A stretch of DNA of 64,000 nucleotides from Oculina patagonica (lineage: Eukaryota): positions 25,606,001 through 25,670,000 of the forward strand of contig NC_135760.1 of NCBI RefSeq assembly GCF_052425735.1, read 5' to 3'. This document shows, piece after piece, positions 29,986 through 62,230 of this stretch (position 1 is its first letter; the number at the start of each line of letters is the position of its first letter). Under the pieces are notes generated by a model. That model saw nothing but the letters and a program-made list of their open reading frames with translations. It was not told the origin of the DNA and did not search any database. Position numbers and translations under genes: made by a program.

Positions 29986-30134
29986 CGTTATCGTTATTAC
30001 CATCATTATTATCGTCAGCACTGACATCATCATCATCGTCGTCATCATCATCATCATCATCATCGTCATTTTTACAATTTAATCCAATCTGTGTTCCCAT
30101 CTGTGGACTGCACTGTTGCTGGGACGCCTGGTTC

Positions 30135-40750: not shown

Positions 40751-40813
40751 CTGAAAGAAACAATTCAAGCAGGAAATATTACATATGAAAACTAATTGAC
40801 CTCCACTGTACTG

Positions 40814-41176
40814 TATGGTGGCCTAGGCGTGCCACAGAAGAATTGTACATTATTTTAAGACTTCTTTAATGATTTTCTAATTTGATTCAATGTGTTGCAT
40901 ATTTTATTGTCTATTTATTATTATTTTTGTTATATATTGTTTGCTTTTCAGTTTTTGATATAGTTTTGTTTTGTAAATTATTGTTATTCGATTTCAGTAT
41001 TAATTGCTTTTCAGTTTTTGATATAGTTTTGTTTTGTAAATTATTGTTATTCAATTTCAGTTTCAATTCAATTTCAGTTCAAAACGAGTTTTATTTTGTT
41101 TTATTTCGTCTCAGTTTTGTTTTTCAAAAGAAAACTGAACTGCATCATGGCCTATGAGTGCCATAGCCCACAATGC
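40814..41176 (+). repeat. 363-bp terminal inverted repeat (also 43477-43839 and 46137-46499; inverted at 52455-52817 and 56479-56841)
   Basis: One left/right mismatch noticed. Contains two ~63-bp tandem units and an inner imperfect palindrome (41142-41176). Confidence 0.95.
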
Positions 41177-41227
41177 CAAGCACGCATGTTGAGGTGCTTC
41201 CCCAAAAGGCATCGCGCGTAATTCAAA

Positions 41228-43476
41228 ATGGCTGAGCGTATTAGGAACGCCGAATGGCAGAATGACGATGCTTTAAGACAAGATCTGGAGAAGTATGTTC
41301 GCAGGAATCTGAGAAGAAATGAAATTCTAGATTTTGTAAGTTTAGACTATCCAATGTATGCGTGGAGTTTAAGAAGCCTTTGTAGAAGGCTCCAGTATTT
41401 TGACCTCAAGTACACAGACTATGGAGTAGAAGTTAGCGATGTGCAAGAAGCTGTTAAAAAGGAGTTGCAAGGTCCTGGTATGCTTTTAGGTTACCGAGCA
41501 ATGCAACAGAAGGTGCGTGAGGTTCATGGTCTAAATGTTCCTCGTGATTTGGTGTACGCGGCGATGGGAGAAGCTGACCCGGATGGACTCAAATCAAGAG
41601 GCGGAGTGGGGCAATCAAATAGACCACAACGATTGAATGCATTTGTCACAGGTGTAAGTTGCCATTAGTTTCATATCGTGCAACCTATTATTTACAGGTG
41701 GGGGGGGGGGGGGGGGGGCTATGAAAAATTGGGGGTGGGCCACTATTTTTCCACATTACAAAAAAGGTGGGTCTGGAAAATTAACGACCGCATTAGGGGT
41801 GGGTCATGGTCAAAATAAATTATTCATTTAACAGCATCTATAACAGTGCAAACATATTCAATCAGGATGCCTAAAGCAGCATTTCTGAGGTGCTAAAAAT
41901 CTAAATTTTCCTGGGGAACATCCTCCAAACCCCCTACTTTGTCATGTACAATCATTATTAACTCAAAACCACCACCTATTGTTATCCCTTTAAACTGCAG
42001 AGACTACATCTACAATGGTTAAAATAATTCCACCTGAATGCCTAAAATAGTATTTAGGAGTTTCTAGAAAATCTAAATTTTCCCGGGGACCATCCAGGCC
42101 CCGAACCCCTCTACTTTGCATGGGCTCCTGACTTTGCTTTGTACAGACATCAAAACCACCAACTATTAGTGTCCTTTTAAACTGCAGAGAATATATCTGC
42201 AACAAAAATTGTACCATAATGCCCTAAAATTCATTTCAAGGACTCTAACACTGTTATGATCCAAACTTTGATCTCGAAATGTTTCTGGAGATTCTGACTA
42301 AAATGATAAGCCAGTGTTTCCTGTAAACATATCTACATTTATTTACTGATGTTGGTTGGTGGGTGGGCCACTAGGTTTTTCTGTGTCACTCCAGGGGTGG
42401 GCCACCCCTATTTTGTTCAAATAATTCATAGCCCACCTCCCCACCCTGTACTTTTTGACTGGTCCCTAAGAGACCAAAAAATTAAAGGAGCAATTTTCTT
42501 AACATATTTGCTGTGTGCTTTTTTCAATAATAACGACCTGACTGTACTATGTCATGTGATGGACATGATAAACTTTGTGGGTACCAAAAGTCAATGTTTC
42601 CTTTGTGTATTTACGGAGGATTAGATACCTACAGTGGAAGAGTTAATTTCCTGCGAGTGTGGACCTCAAACAACAACCCCAAGGTTATAGGAAGGTTCTA
42701 TTTTGAATATCTGTTTGAATCTAGAGGTAAGGGGCAACATTGTAGAAGGCAAATCATGTCTCAGTTAAACTTGTCAACCCTCTAAAAATTCAATTTGGTG
42801 TCATGATGTTTATCAGAAACCTGGAATATTAGTTTCAAATAACAGTGAACAAAATGCAAACACATAAAATAGTATTCTATAGATCTATATTAATCCTTTG
42901 TGTGCTTGAAAGTTGAATGAAAATTTTACCAGTTATAAGAATGTGTTTTTTAGAACATGTCATTTACTGCCAGTGAGTTCCATGTAGTGAAAAACTGTGA
43001 ACAAGGTCTTGAAAATGCTTCCCCCAGGTGCAAAAATTATGCTAGTGAACTAATCTGTCCCCCTCCCCCTAAGCAGTGTCGCGTTTTGACAGTGGAATGC
43101 ATATTAGTACACAAACAAATCTTTACCTTTGTTTTTCAACATTGTTTGGGTTGGGGGGGGAGAGGTTCGCCCAATTTGCAGGAATAATTGAGTTTAGAGT
43201 AATACTACATTGTTAATGTTCTTTTATTTACTGTTTATGTACATTTTCCTGCAGTTCTGCCCGAGACATTACGGATAGACAGGGGTACCGAAACTGATGT
43301 TATGGCAACAATCCATTGCTTTCTTAGAGAAAAACAAGGCGATTTAGAGAAATCTACAGATGCGGTACTATATGGGCCCTCAACCCAAAATAAAATAGAA
43401 AGGTGGTGGCGGGAGCTTTTGGAAAGAATGGAGAGATATTTTAAAGATCAGCTAAAATCATTAGTAGAATGTGGTG
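41228..43476 (+). pseudogene. Transposase exons 1-3 of the outer copy, interrupted in exon 3; the remainder resumes at 52824-53506
   Basis: ...LVECG reads into the next TIR (VWWPRR...stop). The matching EYDASDQTDR sequence resumes after 52817. Confidence 0.85.
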
Positions 43477-46136
43477 TATGGTGGCCTAGGCGTGCCACAG
43501 AAGAATTGTACATTATTTTAAGACTTCTTTAATGATTTTCTAATTTGATTCAATGTGTTGCATATTTTATTGTCTATTTATTATTATTTTTGTTATATAT
43601 TGTTTGCTTTTCAGTTTTTGATATAGTTTTGTTTTGTAAATTATTGTTATTCGATTTCAGTATTAATTGCTTTTCAGTTTTTGATATAGTTTTGTTTTGT
43701 AAATTATTGTTATTCAATTTCAGTTTCAATTCAATTTCAGTTCAAAACGAGTTTTATTTTGTTTTATTTCGTCTCAGTTTTGTTTTTCAAAAGAAAACTG
43801 AACTGCATCATGGCCTATGAGTGCCATAGCCCACAATGCCAAGCACGCATGTTGAGGTGCTTCCCCAAAAGGCATCGCGCGTAATTCAAAATGGCTGAGC
43901 GTATTAGGAACGCCGAATGGCAGAATGACGATGCTTTAAGACAAGATCTGGAGAAGTATGTTCGCAGGAATCTGAGAAGAAATGAAATTCTAGATTTTGT
44001 AAGTTTAGACTATCCAATGTATGCGTGGAGTTTAAGAAGCCTTTGTAGAAGGCTCCAGTATTTTGACCTCAAGTACACAGACTATGGAGTAGAAGTTAGC
44101 GATGTGCAAGAAGCTGTTAAAAAGGAGTTGCAAGGTCCTGGTATGCTTTTAGGTTACCGAGCAATGCAACAGAAGGTGCGTGAGGTTCATGGTCTAAATG
44201 TTCCTCGTGATTTGGTGTACGCGGCGATGGGAGAAGCTGACCCGGATGGACTCAAATCAAGAGGCGGAGTGGGGCAATCAAATAGACCACAACGATTGAA
44301 TGCATTTGTCACAGGTGTAAGTTGCCATTAGTTTCATATCGTGCAACCTATTATTTACAGGTGGGGGGGGGGGGGGGGCTATGAAAAATTGGGGGTGGGC
44401 CACTATTTTTCCACATTACAAAAAAGGTGGGTCTGGAAAATTAACGACCGCATTAGGGGTGGGTCATGGTCAAAATAAATTATTCATTTAACAGCATCTA
44501 TAACAGTGCAAACATATTCAATCAGGATGCCTAAAGCAGCATTTCTGAGGTGCTAAAAATCTAAATTTTCCTGGGGAACATCCTCCAAACCCCCTACTTT
44601 GTCATGTACAATCATTATTAACTCAAAACCACCACCTATTGTTATCCCTTTAAACTGCAGAGACTACATCTACAATGGTTAAAATAATTCCACCTGAATG
44701 CCTAAAATAGTATTTAGGAGTTTCTAGAAAATCTAAATTTTCCCGGGGACCATCCAGGCCCCGAACCCCTCTACTTTGCATGGGCTCCTGACTTTGCTTT
44801 GTACAGACATCAAAACCACCAACTATTAGTGTCCTTTTAAACTGCAGAGAATATATCTGCAACAAAAATTGTACCATAATGCCCTAAAATTCATTTCAAG
44901 GACTCTAACACTGTTATGATCCAAACTTTGATCTCGAAATGTTTCTGGAGATTCTGACTAAAATGATAAGCCAGTGTTTCCTGTAAACATATCTACATTT
45001 ATTTACTGATGTTGGTTGGTGGGTGGGCCACTAGGTTTTTCTGTGTCACTCCAGGGGTGGGCCACCCCTATTTTGTTCAAATAATTCATAGCCCACCTCC
45101 CCACCCTGTACTTTTTGACTGGTCCCTAAGAGACCAAAAAATTAAAGGAGCAATTTTCTTAACATATTTGCTGTGTGCTTTTTTCAATAATAACGACCTG
45201 ACTGTACTATGTCATGTGATGGACATGATAAACTTTGTGGGTACCAAAAGTCAATGTTTCCTTTGTGTATTTACGGAGGATTAGATACCTACAGTGGAAG
45301 AGTTAATTTCCTGCGAGTGTGGACCTCAAACAACAACCCCAAGGTTATAGGAAGGTTCTATTTTGAATATCTGTTTGAATCTAGAGGTAAGGGGCAACAT
45401 TGTAGAAGGCAAATCATGTCTCAGTTAAACTTGTCAACCCTCTAAAAATTCAATTTGGTGTCATGATGTTTATCAGAAACCTGGAATATTAGTTTCAAAT
45501 AACAGTGAACAAAATGCAAACACATAAAATAGTATTCTATAGATCTATATTAATCCTTTGTGTGCTTGAAAGTTGAATGAAAATTTTACCAGTTATAAGA
45601 ATGTGTTTTTTAGAACATGTCATTTACTGCCAGTGAGTTCCATGTAGTGAAAAACTGTGAACAAGGTCTTGAAAATGCTTCCCCCAGGTGCAAAAATTAT
45701 GCTAGTGAACTAATCTGTCCCCCTCCCCCTAAGCAGTGTCGCGTTTTGACAGTGGAATGCATATTAGTACACAAACAAATCTTTACCTTTGTTTTTCAAC
45801 ATTGTTTGGGTTGGGGGGGGAGAGGTTCGCCCAATTTGCAGGAATAATTGAGTTTAGAGTAATACTACATTGTTAATGTTCTTTTATTTACTGTTTATGT
45901 ACATTTTCCTGCAGTTCTGCCCGAGACATTACGGATAGACAGGGGTACCGAAACTGATGTTATGGCAACAATCCATTGCTTTCTTAGAGAAAAACAAGGC
46001 GATTTAGAGAAATCTACAGATGCGGTACTATATGGGCCCTCAACCCAAAATAAAATAGAAAGGTGGTGGCGGGAGCTTTTGGAAAGAATGGAGAGATATT
46101 TTAAAGATCAGCTAAAATCATTAGTAGAATGTGGTG
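43477..46136 (+). mobile_element. Extra left half of the element (TIR plus transposase exons 1-3) with no matching right half
   Basis: 2,660-bp near-perfect tandem repeat of 40814-43476, ending in the same GTGGTG. Confidence 0.85.
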
Positions 46137-46550
46137 TATGGTGGCCTAGGCGTGCCACAGAAGAATTGTACATTATTTTAAGACTTCTTTAATGATTTTC
46201 TAATTTGATTCAATGTGTTGCATATTTTATTGTCTATTTATTATTATTTTTGTTATATATTGTTTGCTTTTCAGTTTTTGATATAGTTTTGTTTTGTAAA
46301 TTATTGTTATTCGATTTCAGTATTAATTGCTTTTCAGTTTTTGATATAGTTTTGTTTTGTAAATTATTGTTATTCAATTTCAGTTTCAATTCAATTTCAG
46401 TTCAAAACGAGTTTTATTTTGTTTTATTTCGTCTCAGTTTTGTTTTTCAAAAGAAAACTGAACTGCATCATGGCCTATGAGTGCCATAGCCCACAATGCC
46501 AAGCACGCATGTTGAGGTGCTTCCCCAAAAGGCATCGCGCGTAATTCAAA

Positions 46551-49481
46551 ATGGCTGAGCGTATTAGGAACGCCGAATGGCAGAATGACGATGCTTTAAG
46601 ACAAGATCTGGAGAAGTATGTTCGCAGGAATCTGAGAAGAAATGAAATTCTAGATTTTGTAAGTTTAGACTATCCAATGTATGCGTGGAGTTTAAGAAGC
46701 CTTTGTAGAAGGCTCCAGTATTTTGACCTCAAGTACACAGACTATGGAGTAGAAGTTAGCGATGTGCAAGAAGCTGTTAAAAAGGAGTTGCAAGGTCCTG
46801 GTATGCTTTTAGGTTACCGAGCAATGCAACAGAAGGTGCGTGAGGTTCATGGTCTAAATGTTCCTCGTGATTTGGTGTACGCGGCGATGGGAGAAGCTGA
46901 CCCGGATGGACTCAAATCAAGAGGCGGAGTGGGGCAATCAAATAGACCACAACGATTGAATGCATTTGTCACAGGTGTAAGTTGCCATTAGTTTCATATC
47001 GTGCAACCTATTATTTACAGGTGGGGGGGGGGGGGGGCTATGAAAAATTGGGGGTGGGCCACTATTTTTCCACATTACAAAAAAGGTGGGTCTGGAAAAT
47101 TAACGACCGCATTAGGGGTGGGTCATGGTCAAAATAAATTATTCATTTAACAGCATCTATAACAGTGCAAACATATTCAATCAGGATGCCTAAAGCAGCA
47201 TTTCTGAGGTGCTAAAAATCTAAATTTTCCTGGGGAACATCCTCCAAACCCCCTACTTTGTCATGTACAATCATTATTAACTCAAAACCACCACCTATTG
47301 TTATCCCTTTAAACTGCAGAGACTACATCTACAATGGTTAAAATAATTCCACCTGAATGCCTAAAATAGTATTTAGGAGTTTCTAGAAAATCTAAATTTT
47401 CCCGGGGACCATCCAGGCCCCGAACCCCTCTACTTTGCATGGGCTCCTGACTTTGCTTTGTACAGACATCAAAACCACCAACTATTAGTGTCCTTTTAAA
47501 CTGCAGAGAATATATCTGCAACAAAAATTGTACCATAATGCCCTAAAATTCATTTCAAGGACTCTAACACTGTTATGATCCAAACTTTGATCTCGAAATG
47601 TTTCTGGAGATTCTGACTAAAATGATAAGCCAGTGTTTCCTGTAAACATATCTACATTTATTTACTGATGTTGGTTGGTGGGTGGGCCACTAGGTTTTTC
47701 TGTGTCACTCCAGGGGTGGGCCACCCCTATTTTGTTCAAATAATTCATAGCCCACCTCCCCACCCTGTACTTTTTGACTGGTCCCTAAGAGACCAAAAAA
47801 TTAAAGGAGCAATTTTCTTAACATATTTGCTGTGTGCTTTTTTCAATAATAACGACCTGACTGTACTATGTCATGTGATGGACATGATAAACTTTGTGGG
47901 TACCAAAAGTCAATGTTTCCTTTGTGTATTTACGGAGGATTAGATACCTACAGTGGAAGAGTTAATTTCCTGCGAGTGTGGACCTCAAACAACAACCCCA
48001 AGGTTATAGGAAGGTTCTATTTTGAATATCTGTTTGAATCTAGAGGTAAGGGGCAACATTGTAGAAGGCAAATCATGTCTCAGTTAAACTTGTCAACCCT
48101 CTAAAAATTCAATTTGGTGTCATGATGTTTATCAGAAACCTGGAATATTAGTTTCAAATAACAGTGAACAAAATGCAAACACATAAAATAGTATTCTATA
48201 GATCTATATTAATCCTTTGTGTGCTTGAAAGTTGAATGAAAATTTTACCAGTTATAAGAATGTGTTTTTTAGAACATGTCATTTACTGCCAGTGAGTTCC
48301 ATGTAGTGAAAAACTGTGAACAAGGTCTTGAAAATGCTTCCCCCAGGTGCAAAAATTATGCTAGTGAACTAATCTGTCCCCCTCCCCCTAAGCAGTGTCG
48401 TGTTTTGACAGTGGAATGCATATTAGTACACAAACAAATCTTTACCTTTGTTTTTCAACATTGTTTGGGTTGGGGGGGGGGGAGAGGTTCGCCCAATTTG
48501 CAGGAATAATTGAGTTTAGAGTAATACTACATTGTTAATGTTCTTTTATTTACTGTTTATGTACATTTTCCTGCAGTTCTGCCCGAGACATTACGGATAG
48601 ACAGGGGTACCGAAACTGATGTTATGGCAACAATCCATTGCTTTCTTAGAGAAAAACAAGGCGATTTAGAGAAATCTACAGATGCGGTACTATATGGGCC
48701 CTCAACCCAAAATAAAATAGAAAGGTGGTGGCGGGAGCTTTTGGAAAGAATGGAGAGATATTTTAAAGATCAGCTAAAATCATTAGTAGAATGTGGTGAA
48801 TATGATGCTAGTGATCAAACAGACAGGTATGTACATGTATGTATTTCATAGTGAACTTACTTACAATTCTAACATGGTACTAGAGAGAATTTCATAAAGG
48901 TGTGAAAACCTAGTAACCAATTAGAAGTAAGCTTCCATGCCAAATAGGAAATAGTAATGCATGAAAGGATTCCAGAGGTTTCACTAGCCTTTGAAACAAG
49001 CAGTCTTTGGTACCTTCAAATTCTTGAAACTGAGGTTTCCTTTTGATTTTGGGAGTACTGGAGGCCAAACTTGTATTTTTTGTAACTGTTTGTATACTTT
49101 ACATCTACCCTTAGGGACCTTCTAGCATATGTCTATATCCCTGTCATTCAAAAGGAGCTCGATGTTTTCAGAAAGTGTGTGTGGAATAACCACAGGAGCA
49201 GGAAGCAGAGGGGAAAAGAACTTCCATCAGGAGTGCCTGAGCATATTTACCACTTCCCTGAACAATATGGTGGACAAAAATGTGGCATCAAGGTCACAGA
49301 AGAACAGTTACTTGAAGTTGCTGAGTTTTCTAAAGTTCTTGAGGAAAATGATGATTATCTAAAGCCATCCGTCCGACAAGAGTGTCAGCGACATGTACCA
49401 GATGCCAATGACATAGATCCAGAAGATGCAAAGGTTGCTTACCTTTTTCTACGATCTCATATCAATAAAAATGCATTTTAA
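46551..49481 (+). CDS. DDE integrase-family (IS3/IS481-like) transposase, ~410 aa, 4 exons (46551-46976, ~47853-48045, 48577-48826, 49115-49481)
   Basis: Motifs GPGMLLGYRAM, SCDGHDKL (D1), LRIDRGTE (D2), STQNKIERWW (E) and WNNHR. Introns 2 and 3 are canonical and in phase. The intron 1 acceptor lacks AG. Confidence 0.85.
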
Positions 49482-50029
49482 AACTGCTATATGAATTGGT
49501 CAAAATGTCCATAATTTTAAATTGGTTTGATAATATGATGTAATCCCACATCAGTTGGAGAGTTCATAGAAGGTCTGTGTTAAATTAGCCTGTATAGCTG
49601 CCCTAAAGGGGAGGGGAAAAGGGGTATTTTCCTCCCTCCCCCTCCCCTATGAGCTTGCTATGATGGCTAGTGCTAAATATACAGGTAAACGTTCAAAGTA
49701 CCTACTGGTAACTTATATGACCTCATGCAGTGACAGGGAATTGTTAAGACATCAATGGAAATAGTGTATAAGGAAATAAACAATGCTGGAATTAGTAAAT
49801 GTTATATTAAAACCCCATCATATACACTGACAATTATATTCAGTAATTCTTGAAGTTGCTGAACTATCCCATGTCCTTGAAGACTGATGATTTTTTGAAT
49901 CCAAGTGAACAAAGAGAGTGTCAGCAACATTTGCCAGATATCAATAACATACCTCTTTTTAAAATCGCATGTCAATAAACATGTATTTTGAAATTGCTGT
50001 CTTGAGTTAAAGATAAGGCCCAGTAACAA

Positions 50030-50205
50030 CAGTGGAACCCCGATATAACGATCTTCGATATAACGATATTCCCGATATAACGATGAATATGTTATGTCCC
50101 GGCAATAGTAAAATGTATGGGATGGAACCCCGATATAACGATTTCTCGATATAACGATATAATTTTACTGCCCCCTTGGCATATCGTTATATCGGGGTTC
50201 CACTG
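50030..50205. mobile_element. 176-bp pogo/Tigger-like MITE (CAGTGGAACCCCGATATAACG TIRs) carried inside the transposon; second copy at 54055-54230
   Basis: Perfect >20-bp TIRs, internal CGATATAACGA repeats and AA flanks. Confidence 0.85.
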
Positions 50206-51149
50206 AATTAACCTATTGTAGCTGATCACTTCCAACCAAGCTAGCACTCAGGTGTATGGTACCTGTGGCAGGTTATATAATTGTTTTCATGGTTACTAAT
50301 CCATTTTCACATCAAATTCTGTTGAAGTTGAGGAAGATTTTCATAACAAAGACTCTAGAACTTGCTTGAACTCTACTTTTGTCATCTTAGGTTGTTCAAC
50401 AGACCAGCATTTCATGACTTGCACATTGTATAAGAATTGTCTGTTGTTTTTTTTTTTTTTTTTGGCATCGAAAAATAACCCAACTGCTCAGTAATAGTTC
50501 TTTTTCAGGAAACATTGCTTATTTGTAAACCTACATCCTCATGCATGACAAGGATGAAGATATGGTAAAAAAAATCAGATCATTCAATCAGGCTTCTTTC
50601 ATAACTCCTATATAACCGTTTTTATTACATGCAATATACTTACAAAAGTGGCTTATTCAAAATTATCTGGATGATGTTTAGTGTCCTTTAACCAAGCTGT
50701 AGGCTAACATTATCTTGACAGTTTTTGACATGTCTTATAACTGGCCATGCAATCAGGTATATTGCTTGTTAAATTATCATAACTATAAACTATAAACTCT
50801 AACATGTAACGCATTAACAAGCTATAACAATTAAAAGCTGAGATTTGATTTTTACTACAAGTCTACAAGTCCTTCCTTTCTTTTAACTTGTAGGTACATC
50901 AAAAAAATTCCAGCCTGTGTATATATATACCTAACAGTTCTTTTATACGTAACAATTTAAATCTCGAAAGGAAAACAATAACTCAACACCAAATAGAAAA
51001 ACTTATGGCCTTTTCCGAAAAATAGGCAATGTGTGAAAACAATATTTTCTTTGCATGCACAGTTCACTTACAAAGCACATTAAAAAATACTTGTATAAAA
51101 GATAGACAGTTCGCAACAGCATAATCAGTACTTCAGTTACTTACTGTTT

Positions 51150-52367
51150 TCACAATTTGTCTAGTTTAAGTAGATCACAGAACTTGTTGCATATGTGCTC
51201 GGTCTTGAATTTTTCTATGGCCTGTGATGAGAGGTTTCCGCAACAGAAAAAGATGGATTGGTCTGCATTGTCCAGAAGTTCAGAAGTTGCTATTTCCGGA
51301 TCAAATAGGGTATAATCGACCCCTTGAATGTCGACGACCATGAGCTGCTTTCCTGATTTACAATAGGTATAATGCGAAAATGTCTCCGCCTTGCAGCTTA
51401 CCTCGCCACCGTCGCCACACACTTCTCCAGTGTTATTCACATGCTTCTCAAACGCGCCCTCGATATAGGGCTCTACTGTAACACATTGGCCATAAAGCTT
51501 TCCAAAGTAAACTTTGGTGTAACGAAGGGTGGACCCATACTCAACTGGGGCTTCTGCAGCAAGCGCTAGCCGTAATGCAAAGTTCCTTGCAAGCGCGTTC
51601 ATCTGGACCACTTTTCTGGTGTGGGTTTCCATCGAAGTAAATAACCTTTCGATCTCTTGTACTTGATCTTCTTTAAACTTTTTGAGCACGTATTTGCCAG
51701 GACTGAGCTCAGAAAGAGCGGTAGCATGGTATGCATCTCTAAACGCGCCACTGGCAAATTTTTGCTTCGACAAAGAAAACTTTGCTTCGCAGGGCTGACG
51801 CCATGATTTCTCGCCCAGGTCAAACTCTTCGAGTTGCACCGAAACAATGTCTGCTGTCGGTTGGATAAGCTTGCCGACCTTCAGCATGGCACTAAGGGGT
51901 ACAGACGCCGCAGCTTTCGTTGCCATCGGCCGGGCAGGCTTTTCTGGAGTTAGTTGTGATTTTGTTTCCCTTACCGACTCGAGCTCGGACATTTCGCTTT
52001 CACCATCACTTTTCTCGATGAAACGCACGTGGATAGCCTTCCAGTTAGTGATCTGGCTACTTTCTGTCCACGAGGGTCCCCTCTCGCCGGCTAAAATATC
52101 ACATTCCATGTGCTCAGCTTTAAAGAAGCGCTTACACGCCTCCTTTATGTTTGAAATCGTTGGTTCACATCCAAGGGGAACCATGGTTAGCGCGCCGATC
52201 CTGGCATATTTTTGATATCGTCCCTCAACATTCGAAGAGAGCCGTTGCACTGTTATGTAATCCATATCGCCACTGCCTGTCGATTCGTCCTTCCCCATTC
52301 TCTTTTTAGCGATTTTCGCCTTAAATGCACGGAATTCGTCGTTGGTTCGCCTTCCTCTTTTTGACAT
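51150..52367 (-). CDS. Intronless alpha-kinase (eEF2K/MHCK/TRPM7/ALPK catalytic family), ~405 aa, transposon cargo
   Basis: FASGAFRDAY, YVLKKF, VEPYIEGAFEKHVNNTG, FSHYTY, VVDIQGV, LFDPEI, GNLS and the HICNKFC zinc motif. ATG in AAAATG context at 52367. Confidence 0.92.
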   Translation of the reverse strand: MSKRGRRTNDEFRAFKAKIAKKRMGKDESTGSGDMDYITVQRLSSNVEGRYQKYARIGALTMVPLGCEPTISNIKEACKRFFKAEHMECDILAGERGPSWTESSQITNWKAIHVRFIEKSDGESEMSELESVRETKSQLTPEKPARPMATKAAASVPLSAMLKVGKLIQPTADIVSVQLEEFDLGEKSWRQPCEAKFSLSKQKFASGAFRDAYHATALSELSPGKYVLKKFKEDQVQEIERLFTSMETHTRKVVQMNALARNFALRLALAAEAPVEYGSTLRYTKVYFGKLYGQCVTVEPYIEGAFEKHVNNTGEVCGDGGEVSCKAETFSHYTYCKSGKQLMVVDIQGVDYTLFDPEIATSELLDNADQSIFFCCGNLSSQAIEKFKTEHICNKFCDLLKLDKL

Positions 52368-55173
52368 TTTGCCGGTCAGAACCACGTGCGATTGTAAACA
52401 GAACCAAGCTTCCAGGTTCTTTCAAGCCGATGGCGTGACAAGAATGCAACCGTTGCATTGTGGGCTATGGCACTCATAGGCCATGATGCAGTTCAGTTTT
52501 CTTTTGAAAAACAAAACTGAGACGAAATAAAACAAAATAAAACTCGTTTTGAACTGAAATTGAATTGAAACTGAAATTGAATAACAATAATTTACAAAAC
52601 AAAACTATATCAAAAACTGAAAAGCAGTTAATACTGAAATCGAATAACAATAATTTACAAAACAAAACTATATCAAAAACTGAAAAGCAAACAATATATA
52701 ACAAAAATAATAATAAATAGACAATAAAATATGCAACACATTGAATCAAATTAGAAAATCATTAAAGAAGTCTTAAAATAATGTACAATTCTTCTGTGGC
52801 ACGCCTAGGCCACCATAGTGGTGAATATGATGCTAGTGATCAAACAGACAGGTATGTACATGTATGTATTTCATAGTGAACTTACTTACAATTCTAACAT
52901 GGTACTAGAGAGAATTTCATAAAGGTGTGAAAACCTAGTAACCAATTAGAAGTAAGCTTCCATGCCAAATAGGAAATAGTAATGCATGAAAGGATTCCAG
53001 AGGTTTCACTAGCCTTTGAAACAAGCAGTCTTTGGTACCTTCAAATTCTTGAAACTGAGGTTTCCTTTTGATTTTGGGAGTACTGGAGGCCAAACTTGTA
53101 TTTTTTGTAACTGTTTGTATACTTTACATCTACCCTTAGGGACCTTCTAGCATATGTCTATATCCCTGTCATTCAAAAGGAGCTCGATGTTTTCAGAAAG
53201 TGTGTGTGGAATAACCACAGGAGCAGGAAGCAGAGGGGAAAAGAACTTCCATCAGGAGTGCCTGAGCATATTTACCACTTCCCTGAACAATATGGTGGAC
53301 AAAAATGTGGCATCAAGGTCACAGAAGAACAGTTACTTGAAGTTGCTGAGTTTTCTAAAGTTCTTGAGGAAAATGATGATTATCTAAAGCCATCCGTCCG
53401 ACAAGAGTGTCAGCGACATGTACCAGATGCCAATGACATAGATCCAGAAGATGCAAAGGTTGCTTACCTTTTTCTACGATCTCATATCAATAAAAATGCA
53501 TTTTAAAACTGCTATATGAATTGGTCAAAATGTCCATAATTTTAAATTGGTTTGATAATATGATGTAATCCCACATCAGTTGGAGAGTTCATAGAAGGTC
53601 TGTGTTAAATTAGCCTGTATAGCTGCCCTAAAGGGGAGGGGAAAAGGGGTATTTTCCTCCCTCCCCCTCCCCTATGAGCTTGCTATGATGGCTAGTGCTA
53701 AATATACAGGTAAACGTTCAAAGTACCTACTGGTAACTTATATGACCTCATGCAGTGACAGGGAATTGTTAAGACATCAATGGAAATAGTGTATAAGGAA
53801 ATAAACAATGCTGGAATTAGTAAATGTTATATTAAAACCCCATCATATACACTGACAATTATATTCAGTAATTCTTGAAGTTGCTGAACTATCCCATGTC
53901 CTTGAAGACTGATGATTTTTTGAATCCAAGTGAACAAAGAGAGTGTCAGCAACATTTGCCAGATATCAATAACATACCTCTTTTTAAAATCGCATGTCAA
54001 TAAACATGTATTTTGAAATTGCTGTCTTGAGTTAAAGATAAGGCCCAGTAACAACAGTGGAACCCCGATATAACGATCTTCGATATAACGATATTCCCGA
54101 TATAACGATGAATATGTTATGTCCCGGCAATAGTAAAATGTATGGGATGGAACCCCGATATAACGATTTCTCGATATAACGATATAATTTTACTGCCCCC
54201 TTGGCATATCGTTATATCGGGGTTCCACTGAATTAACCTATTGTAGCTGATCACTTCCAACCAAGCTAGCACTCAGGTGTATGGTACCTGTGGCAGGTTA
54301 TATAATTGTTTTCATGGTTACTAATCCATTTTCACATCAAATTCTGTTGAAGTTGAGGAAGATTTTCATAACAAAGACTCTAGAACTTGCTTGAACTCTA
54401 CTTTTGTCATCTTAGGTTGTTCAACAGACCAGCATTTCATGACTTGCACATTGTATAAGAATTGTCTGTTGTTTTTTTTTTTTTTTGGCATCGAAAAATA
54501 ACCCAACTGCTCAGTAATAGTTCTTTTTCAGGAAACATTGCTTATTTGTAAACCTACATCCTCATGCATGACAAGGATGAAGATATGGTAAAAAAAATCA
54601 GATCATTCAATCAGGCTTCTTTCATAACTCCTATATAACCGTTTTTATTACATGCAATATACTTACAAAAGTGGCTTATTCAAAATTATCTGGATGATGT
54701 TTAGTGTCCTTTAACCAAGCTGTAGGCTAACATTATCTTGACAGTTTTTGACATGTCTTATAACTGGCCATGCAATCAGGTATATTGCTTGTTAAATTAT
54801 CATAACTATAAACTATAAACTCTAACATGTAACGCATTAACAAGCTATAACAATTAAAAGCTGAGATTTGATTTTTACTACAAGTCTACAAGTCCTTCCT
54901 TTCTTTTAACTTGTAGGTACATCAAAAAAAATTCCAGCCTGTGTATATATATACCTAACAGTTCTTTTATACGTAACAATTTAAATCTCGAAAGGAAAAC
55001 AATAACTCAACACCAAATAGAAAAACTTATGGCCTTTTCCGAAAAATAGGCAATGTGTGAAAACAATATTTTCTTTGCATGCACAGTTCACTTACAAAGC
55101 ACATTAAAAAATACTTGTATAAAAGATAGACAGTTCGCAACAGCATAATCAGTACTTCAGTTACTTACTGTTT

Positions 55174-56391
55174 TCACAATTTGTCTAGTTTAAGTAGATC
55201 ACAGAACTTGTTGCATATGTGCTCGGTCTTGAATTTTTCTATGGCCTGTGATGAGAGGTTTCCGCAACAGAAAAAGATGGATTGGTCTGCATTGTCCAGA
55301 AGTTCAGAAGTTGCTATTTCCGGATCAAATAGGGTATAATCGACCCCTTGAATGTCGACGACCATGAGCTGCTTTCCTGATTTACAATAGGTATAATGCG
55401 AAAATGTCTCCGCCTTGCAGCTTACCTCGCCACCGTCGCCACACACTTCTCCAGTGTTATTCACATGCTTCTCAAACGCGCCCTCGATATAGGGCTCTAC
55501 TGTAACACATTGGCCATAAAGCTTTCCAAAGTAAACTTTGGTGTAACGAAGGGTGGACCCATACTCAACTGGGGCTTCTGCAGCAAGCGCTAGCCGTAAT
55601 GCAAAGTTCCTTGCAAGCGCGTTCATCTGGACCACTTTTCTGGTGTGGGTTTCCATCGAAGTAAATAACCTTTCGATCTCTTGTACTTGATCTTCTTTAA
55701 ACTTTTTGAGCACGTATTTGCCAGGACTGAGCTCAGAAAGAGCGGTAGCATGGTATGCATCTCTAAACGCGCCACTGGCAAATTTTTGCTTCGACAAAGA
55801 AAACTTTGCTTCGCAGGGCTGACGCCATGATTTCTCGCCCAGGTCAAACTCTTCGAGTTGCACCGAAACAATGTCTGCTGTCGGTTGGATAAGCTTGCCG
55901 ACCTTCAGCATGGCACTAAGGGGTACAGACGCCGCAGCTTTCGTTGCCATCGGCCGGGCAGGCTTTTCTGGAGTTAGTTGTGATTTTGTTTCCCTTACCG
56001 ACTCGAGCTCGGACATTTCGCTTTCACCATCACTTTTCTCGATGAAACGCACGTGGATAGCCTTCCAGTTAGTGATCTGGCTACTTTCTGTCCACGAGGG
56101 TCCCCTCTCGCCGGCTAAAATATCACATTCCATGTGCTCAGCTTTAAAGAAGCGCTTACACGCCTCCTTTATGTTTGAAATCGTTGGTTCACATCCAAGG
56201 GGAACCATGGTTAGCGCGCCGATCCTGGCATATTTTTGATATCGTCCCTCAACATTCGAAGAGAGCCGTTGCACTGTTATGTAATCCATATCGCCACTGC
56301 CTGTCGATTCGTCCTTCCCCATTCTCTTTTTAGCGATTTTCGCCTTAAATGCACGGAATTCGTCGTTGGTTCGCCTTCCTCTTTTTGACAT
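55174..56391 (-). CDS. Alpha-kinase, second copy with identical protein (outer element)
   Basis: ORF-track translation is identical to 51150-52385. Confidence 0.92.
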   Translation of the reverse strand: MSKRGRRTNDEFRAFKAKIAKKRMGKDESTGSGDMDYITVQRLSSNVEGRYQKYARIGALTMVPLGCEPTISNIKEACKRFFKAEHMECDILAGERGPSWTESSQITNWKAIHVRFIEKSDGESEMSELESVRETKSQLTPEKPARPMATKAAASVPLSAMLKVGKLIQPTADIVSVQLEEFDLGEKSWRQPCEAKFSLSKQKFASGAFRDAYHATALSELSPGKYVLKKFKEDQVQEIERLFTSMETHTRKVVQMNALARNFALRLALAAEAPVEYGSTLRYTKVYFGKLYGQCVTVEPYIEGAFEKHVNNTGEVCGDGGEVSCKAETFSHYTYCKSGKQLMVVDIQGVDYTLFDPEIATSELLDNADQSIFFCCGNLSSQAIEKFKTEHICNKFCDLLKLDKL

Positions 56392-58819
56392 TTTGCCGGT
56401 CAGAACCACGTGCGATTGTAAACAGAACCAAGCTTCCAGGTTCTTTCAAGCCGATGGCGTGACAAGAATGCAACCGTTGCATTGTGGGCTATGGCACTCA
56501 TAGGCCATGATGCAGTTCAGTTTTCTTTTGAAAAACAAAACTGAGACGAAATAAAACAAAATAAAACTCGTTTTGAACTGAAATTGAATTGAAACTGAAA
56601 TTGAATAACAATAATTTACAAAACAAAACTATATCAAAAACTGAAAAGCAGTTAATACTGAAATCGAATAACAATAATTTACAAAACAAAACTATATCAA
56701 AAACTGAAAAGCAAACAATATATAACAAAAATAATAATAAATAGACAATAAAATATGCAACACATTGAATCAAATTAGAAAATCATTAAAGAAGTCTTAA
56801 AATAATGTACAATTCTTCTGTGGCACGCCTAGGCCACCATAGTACTGATATCATTAAAAATTTGGAAGAATGGGGACTACTTTCTTCTTAACCACATTTC
56901 GGTAAATCACTAGATGAATCTAAATTTCGAAATTAATTAAAGAAATAATTTAAAAAGGCTAAAAAGTTATTAAAGTTATTCAAATGAAAACGTTTTCGAT
57001 TCTAGTTTATCATCAGTGATAAATGATCATCTGTATTCAACTTGGTTTTGTGTTGTTATAATTGCCGAGGGGAACAGCTTGGCGATAAAACAGTGCACCT
57101 GTTTGTTTAATGTTGGTTTCTCGCAAGCAATCAACACGCTTTCCATTATTTTGCGTCAAAAAGTCTTTTTTTTCGTGAACGCGATGTTCCATGTGTATCG
57201 ATGATCAGTTTTTTGCGAGGTGGCAGGCTGGCTCCGAGTTATGGGTCTTATTCTCGTGCTCTGCTTTTCGCACTGCGAAATTACGTTTTGTTTCGCCAAT
57301 ACAAGTTTTGCCACATTTGCAAACGGCACGATAGATTACATTTGATTTGTGCCCGTTTTTGTCTTTGAGGTTAAAAAAACTTTTGATCTTTCGGGTTTGC
57401 CATAGAATAATAAACATGAAGCGTCAATCCGTAAAGATGTTCAGTTTGTTTATGAACCGTTTACTGATTCATTCAATCTTTCAGTGTGGTACTTACCAGG
57501 TAATAGTTCCAAAAACACTCAACAAAATGCACAATTGATCCATGAAACATGATGCTCATGATTAAACTGAAAAAAATAAACATACAACATCAGTTACATC
57601 TCAGTGCTGACAAAAAAAAGCATGCTAATAGAGTGAATTCGTGTAACCCGTTTTTTAAAATGCTAATGAGCCGCAAAATATTCCAATGTTTGAGTACAAT
57701 AAAACAATACACGAATGGTCAGAAAACCTTAAAGAAATCAGTTTAATTGTTTTACAGAAAATAAACAAGAAGTGCTTTTTCCTTCTTTGAACAATTTCAA
57801 CATGTTCAACTCCCTTTGCTATAAACCTATAGCGAAATAAAACGGACGTTGGTTCAAAACACACAGAATTTAATATTTTCGCGTTGTTGTTTTTCAGAAG
57901 ACGGCAAACAAATTTGCCAAGAAAACGTGCAAAGCTATTTTCCTGCTCATTAAACCTTTTGATTGTATAATAAAATTGAACGCTAAGAAATTTGAACGAC
58001 GTTTCGACCTTTCGACGGTCATTTTCAAGTTAGGTGTTTGAATAAAATATAGTAAAAGCGCTAAAATATGTACATACAAACAATAGACAATAAGAATAAA
58101 AAGGCTAAAAATGGCTAAAAAAATAACTTTGTGAAAATGGCATGCATAGTTGTAAAAGATATAATTAAGAACGTAAAGCAAGCGAATAAGACGACGAGAA
58201 TAAGAACATTAAAATACCTAAAAATATCTAAACACCCCTTTCACGAGCACCAAGGATCCAGCACTTTTTCTAAACAAATCATTTGTTGTGTATAAATTTA
58301 ACTGTTCCGGCTGCAATGCAATTACAATGAAAATAACAGAAAGAACTTTGTTTGAAAGAACTGAACACTAGAACAAAGCCGTGACAAAGACAGCGCTGTA
58401 TTCTGCCAACTGAACGACTTTCCGAACTTCCAACACGTCAAAGGTTTATTAGAGATGGAACACCTTAGGCACATAAAGCCAAGAAAATTGTTTACGTCTG
58501 TCTGGCCGTACGTGTTTAGCCAATTAAAGCACCCGTTCCAGTATTTGAACAAAGCGGCAGAGGCTGCGGATGATTTTGATAAACGTTTTCCGGCTGTGTT
58601 TTTTCGGAGGAGTGTAGACAAAAAACAAAAAGGCACAAGCGTGGGCTCGAGTATCGAAAGTTGCCGAGTGAAAGGAGTCGAGAACAAAGCTTTCTAACTA
58701 GTAAACATCGTGTTCTTATGCCTGAGTTGATGCTTATGTTGACGTTCGTTTTCACTTGGCAAATACCATTTTAATATGCTTGCGTTTGTGCTTGCGTCGC
58801 TAGTAAAAGCAAGGCTTAA

Positions 58820-59217: not shown

Positions 59218-60173
59218 GGTCGCGGGGGATACCAACAGCATGAATAAATTCATGAAGGGAAATTTTGCTTGACCTGCATCTTTTAAAACGCTTATTTCTA
59301 TGCTGTTAGGGTGCGATTAAGCTCAAAATTTACAGAGACATAACGAAATGATGAATGATTGTGAATGTCATCTTTTATTTGGTAGATTGCATTTTACGGC
59401 GATGTTATAGCCTCGTTAGTGCCAAATTGGGAAAAACATGATTTTGTGGCAGAGTTTGCGGAACGAGTAGAAGACAGCACACTGCGATTTTGTCAAAAAC
59501 TAATCAGTCAATACCTCTAGAGTGTCATAACAGAAGCGGATTTTTTAATTTAAAGTTTGCCAGCAAGTTATGGCGGTTTAAGTGCGCAAATTTGAATTTA
59601 ATGTCTTCTACCTCTTTCTAAAAGCGCTCTTTTAAAATTCCGCTTCTGTTATGACACACTACAGTATTCATAGTTTACCTATCTGCAGTGGCAAGTCATG
59701 AAGTTCTGTATCCGCGCTGTATTCTCTGCCACAAAATTGTCGGAAAAGTCCAAACTTTGAGATTTCCGAAGGTGTCCCGACCTAAATACGATCATTTTGC
59801 CAAGGAGAGATGTAATTATGGTAATTATATTCCACGCTTTTATGGTGAGAACAATGCGTTTTCAAAAAGAACACGATTGTTTATGCCGAATATTTTTGTG
59901 ATTACTCTGAGTACACTAGTTGCAAAAATAGTCACATTTAAATAAAAATAAGCTCAAAGACTTCCTACAATCTATATGAACGTATATCGCTAAGTGTTGT
60001 GTTAAATTGGTTAAAATATCAAAGAAACAGGGATTTTTTACAAATCACGCGCACGCGCCCATATTTTTCTCCAGTCATAAATATCTCGTAAAGCTGTCGA
60101 TGTCAGTCGTTGTACTTCGTGCATACGCTTTAAATAGATGCATAATGATGAGCCTAAGGTGTCCCCCGCGACC
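59218..60173 (+). mobile_element. Kolobok-like non-autonomous element, 956 bp, GG...CC termini, TTAA TSD
   Basis: TTAA|GGTCGCGGGGGATACC ... GGTGTCCCCCGCGACC|TTAA. Confidence 0.8.
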
Positions 60174-60189
60174 TTAATGATTTCTTCCT

Positions 60190-60420
60190 GGAAAATATTC
60201 GTAATTAACAACACCTTTATCATTGACATTGATCCTAACTGGAATCTACTATTGTTTAAAGAGGCATTGTACATCAAAACCAAGTAGCGGCCTTAGAGCG
60301 AGCTGTGAATCTGTTCTTATTTAAATTATCTCACCTCTAGCATATTAATCTCTACCTTTATTCTGTACTTAACACCTGATGATGTTTTTTGTAATGAAAC
60401 CGAAATATTGTGTTTCCCCC
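60190..60420 (+). mobile_element. Penelope-like 3' remnant with minimal hammerhead-like motif (60371-60414)
   Basis: NWNLLLFKEALYIK-type C-terminus, then AACAC-CTGATGA-stem-GAAATATT-GTGTT. Confidence 0.6.
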
Positions 60421-62230
60421 CTAGGTTTATTTTATTGGCCTGAATATCTAGTCATTTCGGATTTTCCTTCATATTAAACAACTTCAAACCCATGCAAAAG
60501 TAGGTTACCAATGAAAAAATCCTAAGGTCAGACAGACAATTAACACTGAAACAACGCCCTAACAATCATTACCAGCGCATTTCAAAATAAGCACTTCCCA
60601 GGCGAAAAACACGTCTCACAGTAATGTACGTTTATCAAAAAATCTTCGGTTATTTCTGTTATTTTAAAGCATTAACCGCTAACGGCGGTCTATAAATTGG
60701 TAAAACTGACATACTGGCATTCTCCCTGCCTACCTTGGATAGTCGTGAAGAGAATGTTTCAGCGTTTCCTACAGATGGACAAAATAGCGTCTTAACTCAA
60801 GCGATGAAAACCTGCAGAAAATAAATGCATGTGAATTAACTGTTGGCCTTTCAGTATTTGAGTTCAAGAGGGACAAACTGGAAAAACTACTAAGTCTTGT
60901 AAACTGCTCCTACCTGTCTTCCTGTGACAAACCGACAGCCTGACTGAAACGAAGAGAACGATTAAAACTTCTTATGAGGGGTCCAACAGTAACTCAGTGA
61001 GCGTCTCACATGATTGGTCGTGAAAACAATAGGTATCGGCAGGAACAATGCACCTATCCCTATAAAGACAAAAGGCATATTGTTTTACAAGGCCACTGAA
61101 AATAAGAGCTCAGTTCGCACGAGGAACTGCTGTGCTGCTTGTGGGCGTGGAGTGCGTTGAAATGTGCTCTTTCTATTGGTTGTTGATGACATAATGTGTA
61201 AGGTGATTGACAACCGGTCACTGCTCTCATAAAAATTACGATGGCGATCAAGATATAAAATTTCCATATATATTAGTTTAGATGCAATTAAACAGAAATA
61301 AACGAATCTTACTTTCTTTCTTTCTTTCGAATTTATATTTATATAACAGGGCGTGGTCAATTTTCACAGGACGGCTCGATATTCGTAGAAAAAGTGTAGA
61401 AACTGTCAGAAATTATTAAAATAATTTTTACAGTACGATTATACCACTTTGCCCGAATTTCTGGATCTATTTAAATTAAAATTATCAAGGGAAAGGAACC
61501 CCTCATTTGGACAACGACAATTTTAAGGTATTTCAATTCCTAAAATTTCCAAGCGCTATTTTAATGACAATTAAAAATACCCCAAACATCATCTTAACAC
61601 AAGAATTGAGCTCGGCTACAATAATCTTCGGAAATCAGCGTACTCCAGTTAGTAAAACAGCTGTGTTTACAAAACTCAGACAAAAATTCCTGTGCGTAAC
61701 ACATTTTGGGCTCCTCTCGTTTTTCTGACAAGATCACTCCACACGCAAGGATTCTTGATATTCTTGTGGATGATACGTACATAAAAAATATTCATGAGCA
61801 TATGAGCATAAATTACACATAGATTTGATCATGAATATTGAATTATTAAGTGGCAGTTTCTCTTAAAGCGGTCCATCACATTTCGGGTTGGAAGATAGTT
61901 TTCCCTCAAACTATGCCCAGTGAACTATCTTAGGTTGTAAGTAAATTCAACGACTTTAGTTTTTGGAAATACGTTAAAATATATTTTTTAGAGCTATCGA
62001 CAGTGAAGGCTGCAAAAGGCCTAATTTTGAGCTTGGCCAGAACGAGAAATTTCATAAGTTAACGAGCTTGCCGCTCAAAAAGCTGCGTGTTAGTTGCTAT
62101 TTATGTAAACTAACGGCAACATTCAAACACATTCAAGTTACCAAACTACCCCTAACATTGCTAGCATTGCGCACATTGCAAAAAAAAAAAACGAGAAAAA
62201 ACGAGAAACAACGCATTATTAATGACTTAA

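What the first reader, a model, noticed from the sequence alone, without database searches (positions are those of the whole stretch)
46137..52817. Young IS3EU-type DNA transposon carrying an intact alpha-kinase as its second gene
Seen: a self-contained 6,681-bp unit with 363-bp TIRs, TAT..ATA ends and exact 6-bp TSDs at two independent insertions. It holds a spliced DDE transposase and a convergent, intronless ~405-aa protein with all alpha-kinase catalytic and Zn-binding motifs. Established: TAY..RTA termini, a 6-bp TSD and an IS3/IS481-like DDE core match IS3EU. As I recall, the described accessory gene of IS3EU is a YqaJ-type exonuclease, not a kinase. Inference: the kinase occupies the accessory-gene slot and has moved with the element at least twice, so this may be an undescribed kinase-bearing transposon family. 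It could modify host translation, immune or silencing proteins, or the transposase itself, and could seed lineage-specific alpha-kinase expansions.
Basis: partly seen in the sequence, partly recalled or inferred. Interest (0 to 1): 0.92.

Follow-up and report, generated by a model that had tools for sequence, protein, structure and literature searches.

The report
Kinase-carrying IS3EU transposon, nested in itself
This is a young two-gene "cut-and-paste" transposon in the coral Oculina patagonica, and its second gene, an alpha-kinase, is a conserved core gene of this transposon lineage from corals to sea squirts, already noted in passing for fungal relatives, so it is a well-documented member of a known kind.

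Summary
Window 46137-52817 is a 6,681-bp element with 363-374-bp inverted ends, TATGG..CCATA termini and an exact 6-bp target duplication. It sits inside another copy of itself. A third, independent copy lies elsewhere in the Oculina patagonica genome.

It carries a four-exon, 411-aa integrase-core (Pfam rva_4) transposase. Convergent to it is an intronless 405-aa protein with a full alpha-kinase domain.

The "one-off capture" reading is refuted:
- The same kinase/transposase pair occurs in 11 of 12 loci examined. These come from stony coral, sea anemone, soft coral, hydrozoan, acorn worm and sea squirt.
- Six of the nine non-Oculina pairs showed long inverted ends, and five of those a 6-bp duplication.
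- Kinase dN/dS is 0.10-0.18, and the catalytic residues are invariant.
- RNA contigs show both genes transcribed and the transposase spliced.

The "undescribed family" reading is not supported. Kojima 2025 (PMC12730594) states that fungal IS3EU elements carry transposase and alpha-kinase genes in opposite orientations.

Two details are new. The window's transposase copies have lost the intron-1 splice acceptor, so they probably depend on other copies. The kinase also has a conserved N-terminal beta-grasp domain. What the kinase phosphorylates is unknown.

The scan had noted the self-nesting of this same stretch before (s1-310775), not on other DNA.

The parts
40808..40813 (.). Left copy of the outer 6-bp target duplication (GTACTG)
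40814..43476 (+). Left half (element positions 1-2662) of the outer copy, first of two tandem left halves
   Evidence: 99.7% identical to the inner element. Differences are homopolymer lengths plus one SNP.
43477..46136 (+). Second tandem left half (positions 1-2662). It ends in GTGGTG, the left copy of the inner target duplication (46131-46136).
46137..52817 (+). Complete inner element, 6,681 bp, with TATGG..CCATA ends
46137..46510 (+). Left terminal inverted repeat. It holds a 63-bp tandem repeat and short GAAAT/TGAAA-type sub-repeats. RNA contigs of the transposase extend into it.
46551..46976 (+). Transposase exon 1 (aa 1-142), the N-terminal region, without an HHCC motif
   Evidence: RNA joint
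47851..47852 (+). Lost intron-1 splice acceptor. The window has AA where the sister copy L005, Exaiptasia and the RNA contigs have AG. The next base makes G143R.
47853..48045 (+). Transposase exon 2, with the first catalytic D (DGHDKL)
   Evidence: Pfam rva_4 profile positions 22-56
48577..48826 (+). Transposase exon 3, with the second D (RIDRGTE) and the E (NKIERWW). It also contains the self-insertion target 48793-48798.
   Evidence: GT..AG RNA joints
49115..49481 (+). Transposase exon 4 (C-terminal domain, stop included)
50030..50205 (.). 176-bp miniature element with 23-bp perfect inverted ends, inserted between the two genes. It is absent from copy L005 and from all RNA contigs of the element.
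51150..52367 (-). Alpha-kinase gene, intronless, 405 aa. Layout: basic N-terminus, beta-grasp domain (about aa 35-118), disordered linker, alpha-kinase domain (about aa 195-403).
52444..52817 (-). Right terminal inverted repeat. Kinase RNA contigs extend into its inner part.
52818..56841 (+). Right part (positions 2657-6681) of the outer copy. It begins with the second GTGGTG and includes an identical second kinase ORF at 55174-56391 (-).
56842..56847 (.). Right copy of the outer target duplication (GTACTG)

Best explanation
It is a recently active member of the IS3EU (= GingerRoot) superfamily of cut-and-paste DNA transposons in Oculina patagonica. Its standard gene set is two convergent genes between long inverted ends: an integrase-core DDE transposase and an alpha-kinase with an N-terminal beta-grasp domain.

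Shown here:
- The element has inserted at least three times in this genome, with exact 6-bp duplications. One insertion went into exon 3 of the transposase of another copy.
- The kinase has been inherited together with the transposase across cnidarians, a hemichordate and tunicates.
- The kinase is under purifying selection and keeps every catalytic and zinc-binding residue.
- Both genes are transcribed, with transcripts reaching into the inverted ends.

Inferred:
- The kinase is an active Ser/Thr kinase that serves the transposon rather than the host.
- It most likely phosphorylates either the transposase or a very conserved nuclear host protein (chromatin, repair or silencing), to permit or regulate transposition.
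- The beta-grasp domain acts as a docking or oligomerisation module, and the basic N-terminus acts as a nuclear signal.
- The window's copies carry a destroyed intron-1 acceptor in the transposase, so they probably now depend on transposase from intact copies such as L005.
- The extra left half is best explained by unequal crossing-over between the adjacent direct left halves.
For: Structure of the element:
- Ends and duplications.
- Gene model of 411 aa, equal to the length of NCBI's rva_4 product for the sister copy.

Expression:
- RNA contigs carry all three intron joints, two of them GT..AG.
- One 1,296-nt contig is fully spliced.
- Exon depth is 5-20 times intron depth.
- A 2,118-nt contig covers most of the kinase ORF.

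Linkage in other species:
- A convergent kinase plus rva_4 pair occurs in Exaiptasia (353-bp ends, duplication TTCATG), Dendronephthya (265-bp ends), Acropora, Saccoglossus (about 600-bp ends, GAGGAG) and Ciona (CTATAG).
- It also occurs in an unnamed ENA eukaryote (CAGGTG), Clytia and two coral-metagenome contigs.
- The terminal 10 bases TATGGTGGCC are the same in cnidarians and the acorn worm.
- Identities of kinase and transposase to the Oculina proteins co-vary (Spearman 0.92).

Kinase:
- dN/dS is 0.10-0.18 overall and 0.07-0.15 in the N-terminal domain.
- D346, Q348, D356, H332, H391, C393 and C397 are invariant or nearly so in 43 sequences. They align to the catalytic and zinc residues of myosin heavy chain kinase A.
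- The fold matches TRPM7 and MHCK A, with TM 0.71-0.76.

Literature:
- IS3EU has TA..TA ends, a 6-bp duplication and no HHCC (PMC10045372).
- Fungal IS3EU end in TAYGG..CCRTA and carry transposase and alpha-kinase genes in opposite orientations (PMC12730594).
Against: - No experiment or computation here shows what the kinase phosphorylates, or that it is needed for transposition.
- The transposase could not be placed in a tree with Repbase IS3EU or GingerRoot proteins. Sequence links to bacterial IS3/IS481 are only sub-threshold: HTH_21 at E 0.007 and rve at E 0.06, and no NCBIfam hit.
- The RNA evidence comes from assembled contigs of runs whose RNA nature is guessed, and from other copies than the window's. 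Those contigs lack the window's 6-bp insert and its 176-bp miniature element.
- The third left half could be an assembly artefact.
- In Pycnogonum only a transposase fragment lies near the kinase. In Acropora no inverted ends were found.
Confidence: 0.85

Rival explanations
1. The kinase is a host gene captured once by one young Oculina element family and carried passively.
For: Within Oculina the copies are 99.3-99.9% identical, so they say nothing about selection by themselves. DNA transposons do capture host genes.
Against: - The same convergent pair lies inside inverted ends in sea anemone, soft coral, acorn worm, sea squirt and an unnamed eukaryote, and next to the transposase in Clytia.
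- dN/dS is 0.10-0.18 between diverged families.
- Kinase and transposase divergences co-vary.
- Fungal IS3EU carry an alpha-kinase too (PMC12730594).
Confidence: 0.02
2. The kinase benefits the host (for example in immunity or stress signalling), and its association with the transposon is a domestication in progress. The element is only its vehicle.
For: - Gene annotators name these proteins as host genes, such as myosin heavy chain kinase-like, TRPM6-like and eEF2 kinase.
- The Pycnogonum homologue has a 6.5-kb gene range and only a transposase fragment nearby.
- ALPK1 is an innate immune sensor (general knowledge).
Against: - In 11 of 12 loci the kinase sits beside a transposase, and in several of them within intact inverted ends flanked by target duplications.
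- It is multi-copy, and copies are polymorphic in position.
- Conservation follows the transposase rather than host phylogeny: Oculina is closer to Exaiptasia (63%) than to Acropora (57%).
Confidence: 0.08
3. The three-left-halves arrangement, or even the nesting, is an assembly artefact of a repeated element rather than a real locus.
For: - Three left halves and two right halves are odd.
- The copies differ mostly in homopolymer lengths, which is typical of long-read error.
- Two insertions at the very same 6 bases would otherwise be needed to explain the extra half by nesting.
Against: - The nest has a clean 6-bp duplication (GTGGTG), and the outer copy has its own (GTACTG).
- The two upstream left halves share an SNP (element position 2265) that the inner copy lacks. 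This fits a real outer and inner pair plus unequal crossing-over.
Confidence: 0.2

Closest known systems
[quoted passage not shown] 2019, PMC6839031)
   Same: - TA..TA termini and a 6-bp target duplication.
- Long inverted ends.
- A DDE transposase with an integrase-like core and no HHCC finger, and the first catalytic D about 150 residues from the N-terminus.
- Families are reported from cnidarians, acorn worm, fish and corals.
   Different: The inverted ends here (363-374 bp) are longer than the 100-150 bp given for Selaginella GingerRoot. The published descriptions of animal and plant members that I could read do not mention a kinase gene.
TET+ IS3EU families of rust fungi and Tuber (Kojima 2025, PMC12730594)
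   Same: - They end in TAYGG..CCRTA and make 6-bp duplications.
- They carry a transposase and an alpha-kinase gene in opposite orientations.
   Different: The fungal elements have a third gene, a TET/JBP dioxygenase, between the two. The Oculina element has only non-coding DNA and a miniature element there. No sequence comparison with the fungal kinases was possible with the tools.
ISL2EU transposons with a YqaJ exonuclease second ORF (PMC4482050)
   Same: A two-ORF DNA transposon whose second protein has no known role in transposition.
   Different: It is a different superfamily (PHIS), with a different transposase and a different second gene.
Cellular alpha-kinases: Dictyostelium myosin heavy chain kinase A, TRPM7 kinase domain, eEF2 kinase
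   Same: - Full Pfam Alpha_kinase domain and the same fold (TM 0.71-0.76).
- The catalytic D..Q, the second D, the Lys and the H/H/C/C zinc site are conserved.
   Different: - The protein is small (about 400 aa).
- It has a family-specific N-terminal beta-grasp domain in place of WD40, channel or calmodulin-binding parts.
- It is encoded inside a mobile element.
- Its glycine-rich loop reads FCCGNLS rather than FGLGNLG.

Membership tests
IS3EU / GingerRoot DNA transposons | Termini 5'-TA..TA-3' (TAYGG..CCRTA in the fungal families) | tested here: met
   TATGG..CCATA at 46137 and 52817, at the outer ends and in L005. Definition from PMC10045372 and PMC12730594.
IS3EU / GingerRoot DNA transposons | 6-bp target site duplication | tested here: met
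   In Oculina: GTGGTG, GTACTG and CTACTC. In relatives: TTCATG, GAGGAG, CTATAG and CAGGTG.
IS3EU / GingerRoot DNA transposons | DDD/E transposase that clusters with Repbase IS3EU and GingerRoot proteins | not testable with these tools
   - No Repbase or Dfam sequences were available.
- Indirect support: Pfam PF24764 rva_4 (integrase core) on the sister copy's product and on relatives, at E about 1e-19 to 1e-20.
- D, D and E were located.
- Only sub-threshold HTH_21 and rve hits were found.
IS3EU / GingerRoot DNA transposons | No HHCC zinc finger upstream of the core; first catalytic D 100-300 residues from the N-terminus | tested here: met
   The 142-aa N-terminal exon has one Cys and one His. 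The first D (DGHDKL) lies near residue 152.
IS3EU / GingerRoot DNA transposons | Autonomous copy: a complete, expressible transposase gene | tested here: not met
   The reading frame of all four exons is open, but the intron-1 acceptor is AA in all three window copies. Copy L005 and the RNA contigs have AG. The family is autonomous; this copy probably is not.
Alpha-kinase family (Pfam PF02816) | Full-length match above Pfam's gathering score | tested here: met
   120.4 bits against a cutoff of 21.3, over profile positions 1-185 of 185.
Alpha-kinase family (Pfam PF02816) | Catalytic Lys, D-x-Q, second Asp and the His/His/Cys/Cys zinc site | tested here: met
   K229, D346, Q348, D356, H332, H391, C393 and C397 are invariant or at least 90% conserved in 43 family members. 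They align with MHCK A. The D756A and D766A mutants of MHCK A are deposited as inactive (titles).
Alpha-kinase family (Pfam PF02816) | Alpha-kinase fold | tested here: met
   AlphaFold model with pLDDT 87.7. Foldseek gives E 9e-20 to TRPM7 kinase and 2e-18 to MHCK A, with TM by target 0.71-0.76.
Alpha-kinase family (Pfam PF02816) | Protein kinase activity | not testable with these tools
   Needs recombinant protein.

The most novel reading that the evidence does not exclude
The alpha-kinase is an obligatory, ancestral co-factor of IS3EU transposition, conserved from fungi to chordates. It phosphorylates the transposase or a universal chromatin or repair protein, and its beta-grasp domain docks it to that target. 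If so, many "lineage-specific alpha-kinase expansions" annotated in corals, anemones, tunicates and rust fungi would simply be copies of this transposon.
Probability: 0.4. Interest if true: 0.6.

Novelty: new member of a known kind. Interest (0 to 1): 0.45.

Why it matters
- Very few DNA transposon superfamilies carry a conserved enzyme other than the transposase, and none is known to need a protein kinase.
- The kinase stays linked to the transposase across several animal phyla, under purifying selection and with an added conserved beta-grasp domain. That makes "what does the IS3EU kinase do?" a question that can now be tested.
- There is a practical annotation consequence. These genes are now named myosin-heavy-chain-kinase-like, TRPM6-like or eEF2 kinase in coral, anemone, acorn worm and tunicate genomes. 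They inflate kinome counts, and they are probably behind the alpha-kinase "expansion" reported in rust fungi.
- The finding itself is not a new kind of element, because the architecture is mentioned in the 2025 literature on fungal IS3EU.

Tried and rejected
- Pfam on single transposase exons of the window gave only weak rva_4 hits (E 0.01-0.19). I relied on NCBI's product for copy L005 and on intronless relatives.
- NCBIfam and PDB sequence searches with the Ciona transposase found nothing. A direct sequence link to bacterial IS3/IS481 was therefore not shown.
- Fold searches with the N-terminal domain gave only weak beta-grasp matches of the ubiquitin-like or PB1 type (E 0.015-0.2, TM 0.4-0.55). 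No specific family can be named.
- No inverted ends were found around the Acropora digitifera pair or the Pycnogonum gene.
- dN/dS beyond about 77% protein identity was unusable because synonymous sites are saturated.
- The scan's notebook had nothing under the words alpha-kinase or IS3EU.
- I considered that the two nested copies might record a target preference for GTGGTG. The seven duplications seen share no motif, so I dropped that idea.
- I considered a U12 or AT-AC intron as an explanation for the missing AG. I rejected it because the sister copy and Exaiptasia have ordinary AG acceptors, and the donor is GTAAGT.


Full report
**Observation**

- The repeat finder gives inverted arms 46137-46510 and 52444-52817, 374 nt at 98%. 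blastn gives 363 nt at 99.7%.
- The element reads TATGG at its start and CCATA at its end. It is flanked on both sides by GTGGTG.
- BLAST of the 6,681-bp unit against the window shows it lies inside another copy of itself:
  - 40814-43476 and 43477-46136 each equal element positions 1-2662.
  - 52818-56841 equals positions 2657-6681.
  - The outermost flanks are both GTACTG.
- The copies differ only in homopolymer lengths and one SNP, at element position 2265. That SNP is shared by the two upstream left halves.
- So there are three left halves and two right halves. The simplest account is one self-insertion followed by unequal crossing-over between the two adjacent direct left halves. An assembly artefact for the extra half cannot be excluded.

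**Source genome and a third insertion**

- A protein search with the kinase found a 99%-identical NCBI protein of Oculina patagonica.
- Its locus, L005, is another copy of the element: 99.3% identical, at a different place, with flanks CTACTC on both sides.
- That copy lacks 176 bp found in the window (50030-50205). This stretch is a miniature element with 23-bp perfect inverted ends.
- The element has therefore inserted at least three times, each time with an exact 6-bp duplication.

**Transposase**

- tblastx against the Exaiptasia and Dendronephthya elements showed four conserved coding blocks.
- With splice sites placed, the exons are 46551-46976, 47853-48045, 48577-48826 and 49115-49481. 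They give 411 aa.
- This is the product length NCBI calls for the L005 copy, which carries Pfam PF24764 rva_4, "Integrase core domain".
- The catalytic residues lie in DGHDKL, RIDRGTE and NKIERWW.
- The N-terminal 142 aa have one Cys and one His, so there is no HHCC finger.
- In all three window copies the intron-1 acceptor is AA. L005 and Exaiptasia have AG there, and the first codon of exon 2 is changed (G143R).
- The next AG downstream would remove the first catalytic D. The window's copies are therefore probably unable to make transposase and would depend on copies like L005.
- The self-insertion site 48793-48798 lies in exon 3 of the outer copy.

**Kinase**

- ORF 51150-52367 (-) gives 405 aa from the first ATG. 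An identical second copy lies at 55174-56391.
- Pfam Alpha_kinase matches over its whole length at 120 bits.
- phmmer against PDB aligns it to myosin heavy chain kinase A, TRPM7 and eEF2 kinase. The motifs FSHYTY, VVDIQG, DPEI, GNL and HxCNxxC are in register.
- In a 43-sequence family alignment, D346, Q348, G349, D356, H332, E299, K308, N311 and N378 are invariant. K229, H391, C393 and C397 are at least 90% conserved.
- The AlphaFold model (pLDDT 87.7) matches TRPM7 and MHCK A kinase structures, with E about 1e-19 and TM by target 0.71-0.76.
- Residues 35-118 form a separate, very confident beta-grasp domain (pLDDT 92.6 when modelled alone).
  - It has its own invariant residues: Q41, D90, G97-P98-S99 and R115.
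  - Only weak ubiquitin-like and PB1-type matches were found.
- Residues 8-23 are basic and helical, and residues 120-150 are disordered.
- The window's copy has a 6-bp in-frame insertion (two residues) that L005 and all RNA contigs lack.

**Expression**

- Contigs of four runs listed as RNA were laid on 46450-52449.
- They carry joints at all three introns. Introns 2 and 3 are GT..AG. At intron 1 the joined contigs continue with the intact copies' base rather than the window's C at 47853, and unspliced contigs of two runs read G at 47852, restoring the AG acceptor.
- One 1,296-nt contig is fully spliced.
- Exon depth is 5-20 times intron depth.
- A 2,118-nt contig covers most of the kinase ORF (to 52245) and about 950 nt downstream of it.
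- Contigs run on into the inner parts of both inverted ends, so both promoters probably lie there.
- These are assembled contigs from other copies of the family. They show that the family is expressed, not that this copy is.

**Is the kinase a passenger?**

- Starting from kinase homologues, a convergent rva_4 gene lies next to the kinase in:
  - Exaiptasia (353-bp perfect ends, TATGGTGGCCTAG termini, duplication TTCATG);
  - Acropora digitifera;
  - Dendronephthya (265-bp ends);
  - two coral-metagenome contigs;
  - Saccoglossus (about 600-bp ends, TATGGTGGCCTA, duplication GAGGAG);
  - Ciona (TATGG..CCATA, duplication CTATAG).

- Actinostola keeps only exon 1 of the transposase, and Pycnogonum only a fragment.
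- Starting instead from the transposase, both loci looked at have a convergent kinase: an unnamed ENA eukaryote (duplication CAGGTG) and Clytia, where the kinase is unannotated.
- Identities of kinase and transposase to the Oculina proteins fall together (Spearman 0.92, n = 9).
- Nei-Gojobori dN/dS for the kinase is 0.13, 0.10 and 0.18 between families with dS of 0.66-1.27. It is lower still in the N-terminal domain.
- The representative search counts 153 clusters at E below 1e-30.

**Is it known?**

- IS3EU is defined by TA..TA termini, 6-bp duplications and a DDD/E transposase without HHCC. It is one lineage with GingerRoot (PMC10045372). GingerRoot relatives were reported in coral and sea anemone (PMC6839031), with no mention of a kinase.
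- Kojima 2025 (PMC12730594) says fungal IS3EU end in TAYGG..CCRTA. [quoted passage not shown] - The architecture is thus already recorded, if only in passing.
- The YqaJ second ORF belongs to ISL2EU (PMC4482050).
- A 2015 paper lists 79 and 39 alpha-kinase genes in two rust genomes and none in Microbotryomycetes (PMC4469406). Given the fungal IS3EU, these are plausibly transposon copies; this is an inference.

**Mechanism**

- Shown: the kinase has co-inherited with the transposase over very long times, is constrained, looks catalytically competent and is transcribed.
- Inferred: it works for the element.
  - Its partner must exist in fungi and animals alike. The most economical candidates are therefore the transposase itself or a universally conserved nuclear protein.
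  - The beta-grasp domain would then be the docking module.
- No tool result bears on the substrate.

**Verdict**

It is a new member of a known kind rather than a new kind.

New detail added here:
- the cross-phylum linkage with conserved termini;
- selection on the kinase and its extra domain;
- expression and the splice model;
- the splice-site defect of the window's copies.

Noticed in passing
window 50030-50205: A 176-bp miniature inverted-repeat element (23-bp perfect ends, flanked by AA) sits inside the transposon. Word depth in RNA-run contigs is in the thousands, so it is an abundant, transcribed family elsewhere in the genome.
   Followed up: partly
window 47023-47765: Intron 1 of the transposase contains a stretch of about 740 bp bounded by an imperfect inverted repeat (G-run + CTATGAA.. 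/ ..TTCATAG + C-rich). It is probably another small nested element. A second long G-run lies near 48472. Both G-runs vary in length between copies.
   Followed up: no
window 46238-46420 and 52535-52677; L003 9637-9753; L008 9267-9553; L009 9018-9515: The inverted ends of the Oculina, Dendronephthya, Saccoglossus and Ciona elements all hold arrays of short AT-rich sub-repeats of the GAAAT/TGAAA/CAAAAT type. These may be transposase binding sites conserved in kind across phyla.
   Followed up: no
window 49482-51149: RNA contigs cover the whole 1.7-kb spacer between the two convergent genes. The two transcripts may overlap tail to tail and could form double-stranded RNA. Contigs carry no direction, so this is not shown.
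   Followed up: no
L004 11869-14414 (Actinostola): A unit of about 2.5 kb lies next to a 507-aa kinase gene model. It has 204-213-bp inverted ends beginning TATGGTGGCCTAC and holds only exon 1 of the transposase (81% identical). It looks like a deletion derivative of the same family.
   Followed up: partly
L011 12465-13120: The right inverted end is present twice in tandem in this unnamed eukaryote's element. The 6-bp duplication CAGGTG pairs the left end with the outer of the two.
   Followed up: no
window 24292-29045 and 59336-63066: There are two further pairs of long inverted repeats (911-nt arms at 99% and 830-nt arms at 99%), with more inverted pairs nested inside the first. They are probably other young elements with inverted ends.
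   Followed up: no
window 3367-11159 vs 21544-22831, 30006-33269 and 36721-37362: Large direct repeats of 97-100% identity lie about 15, 18 and 22 kb apart. This points to segmental duplication of the host region upstream of the transposon nest. Assembly gaps (N runs) lie at 1628-1798, 11293-11792 and 38910-39409.
   Followed up: no
database annotation (P0001, P0008, P0022, P0098, P0124, P0132, P0142): The element-borne kinases are annotated in public genomes as myosin heavy chain kinase A/B/D-like, TRPM6(-like) or eEF2 kinase. The transposases are annotated as uncharacterized proteins. Kinome and gene-family counts in these species include transposon copies.
   Followed up: partly
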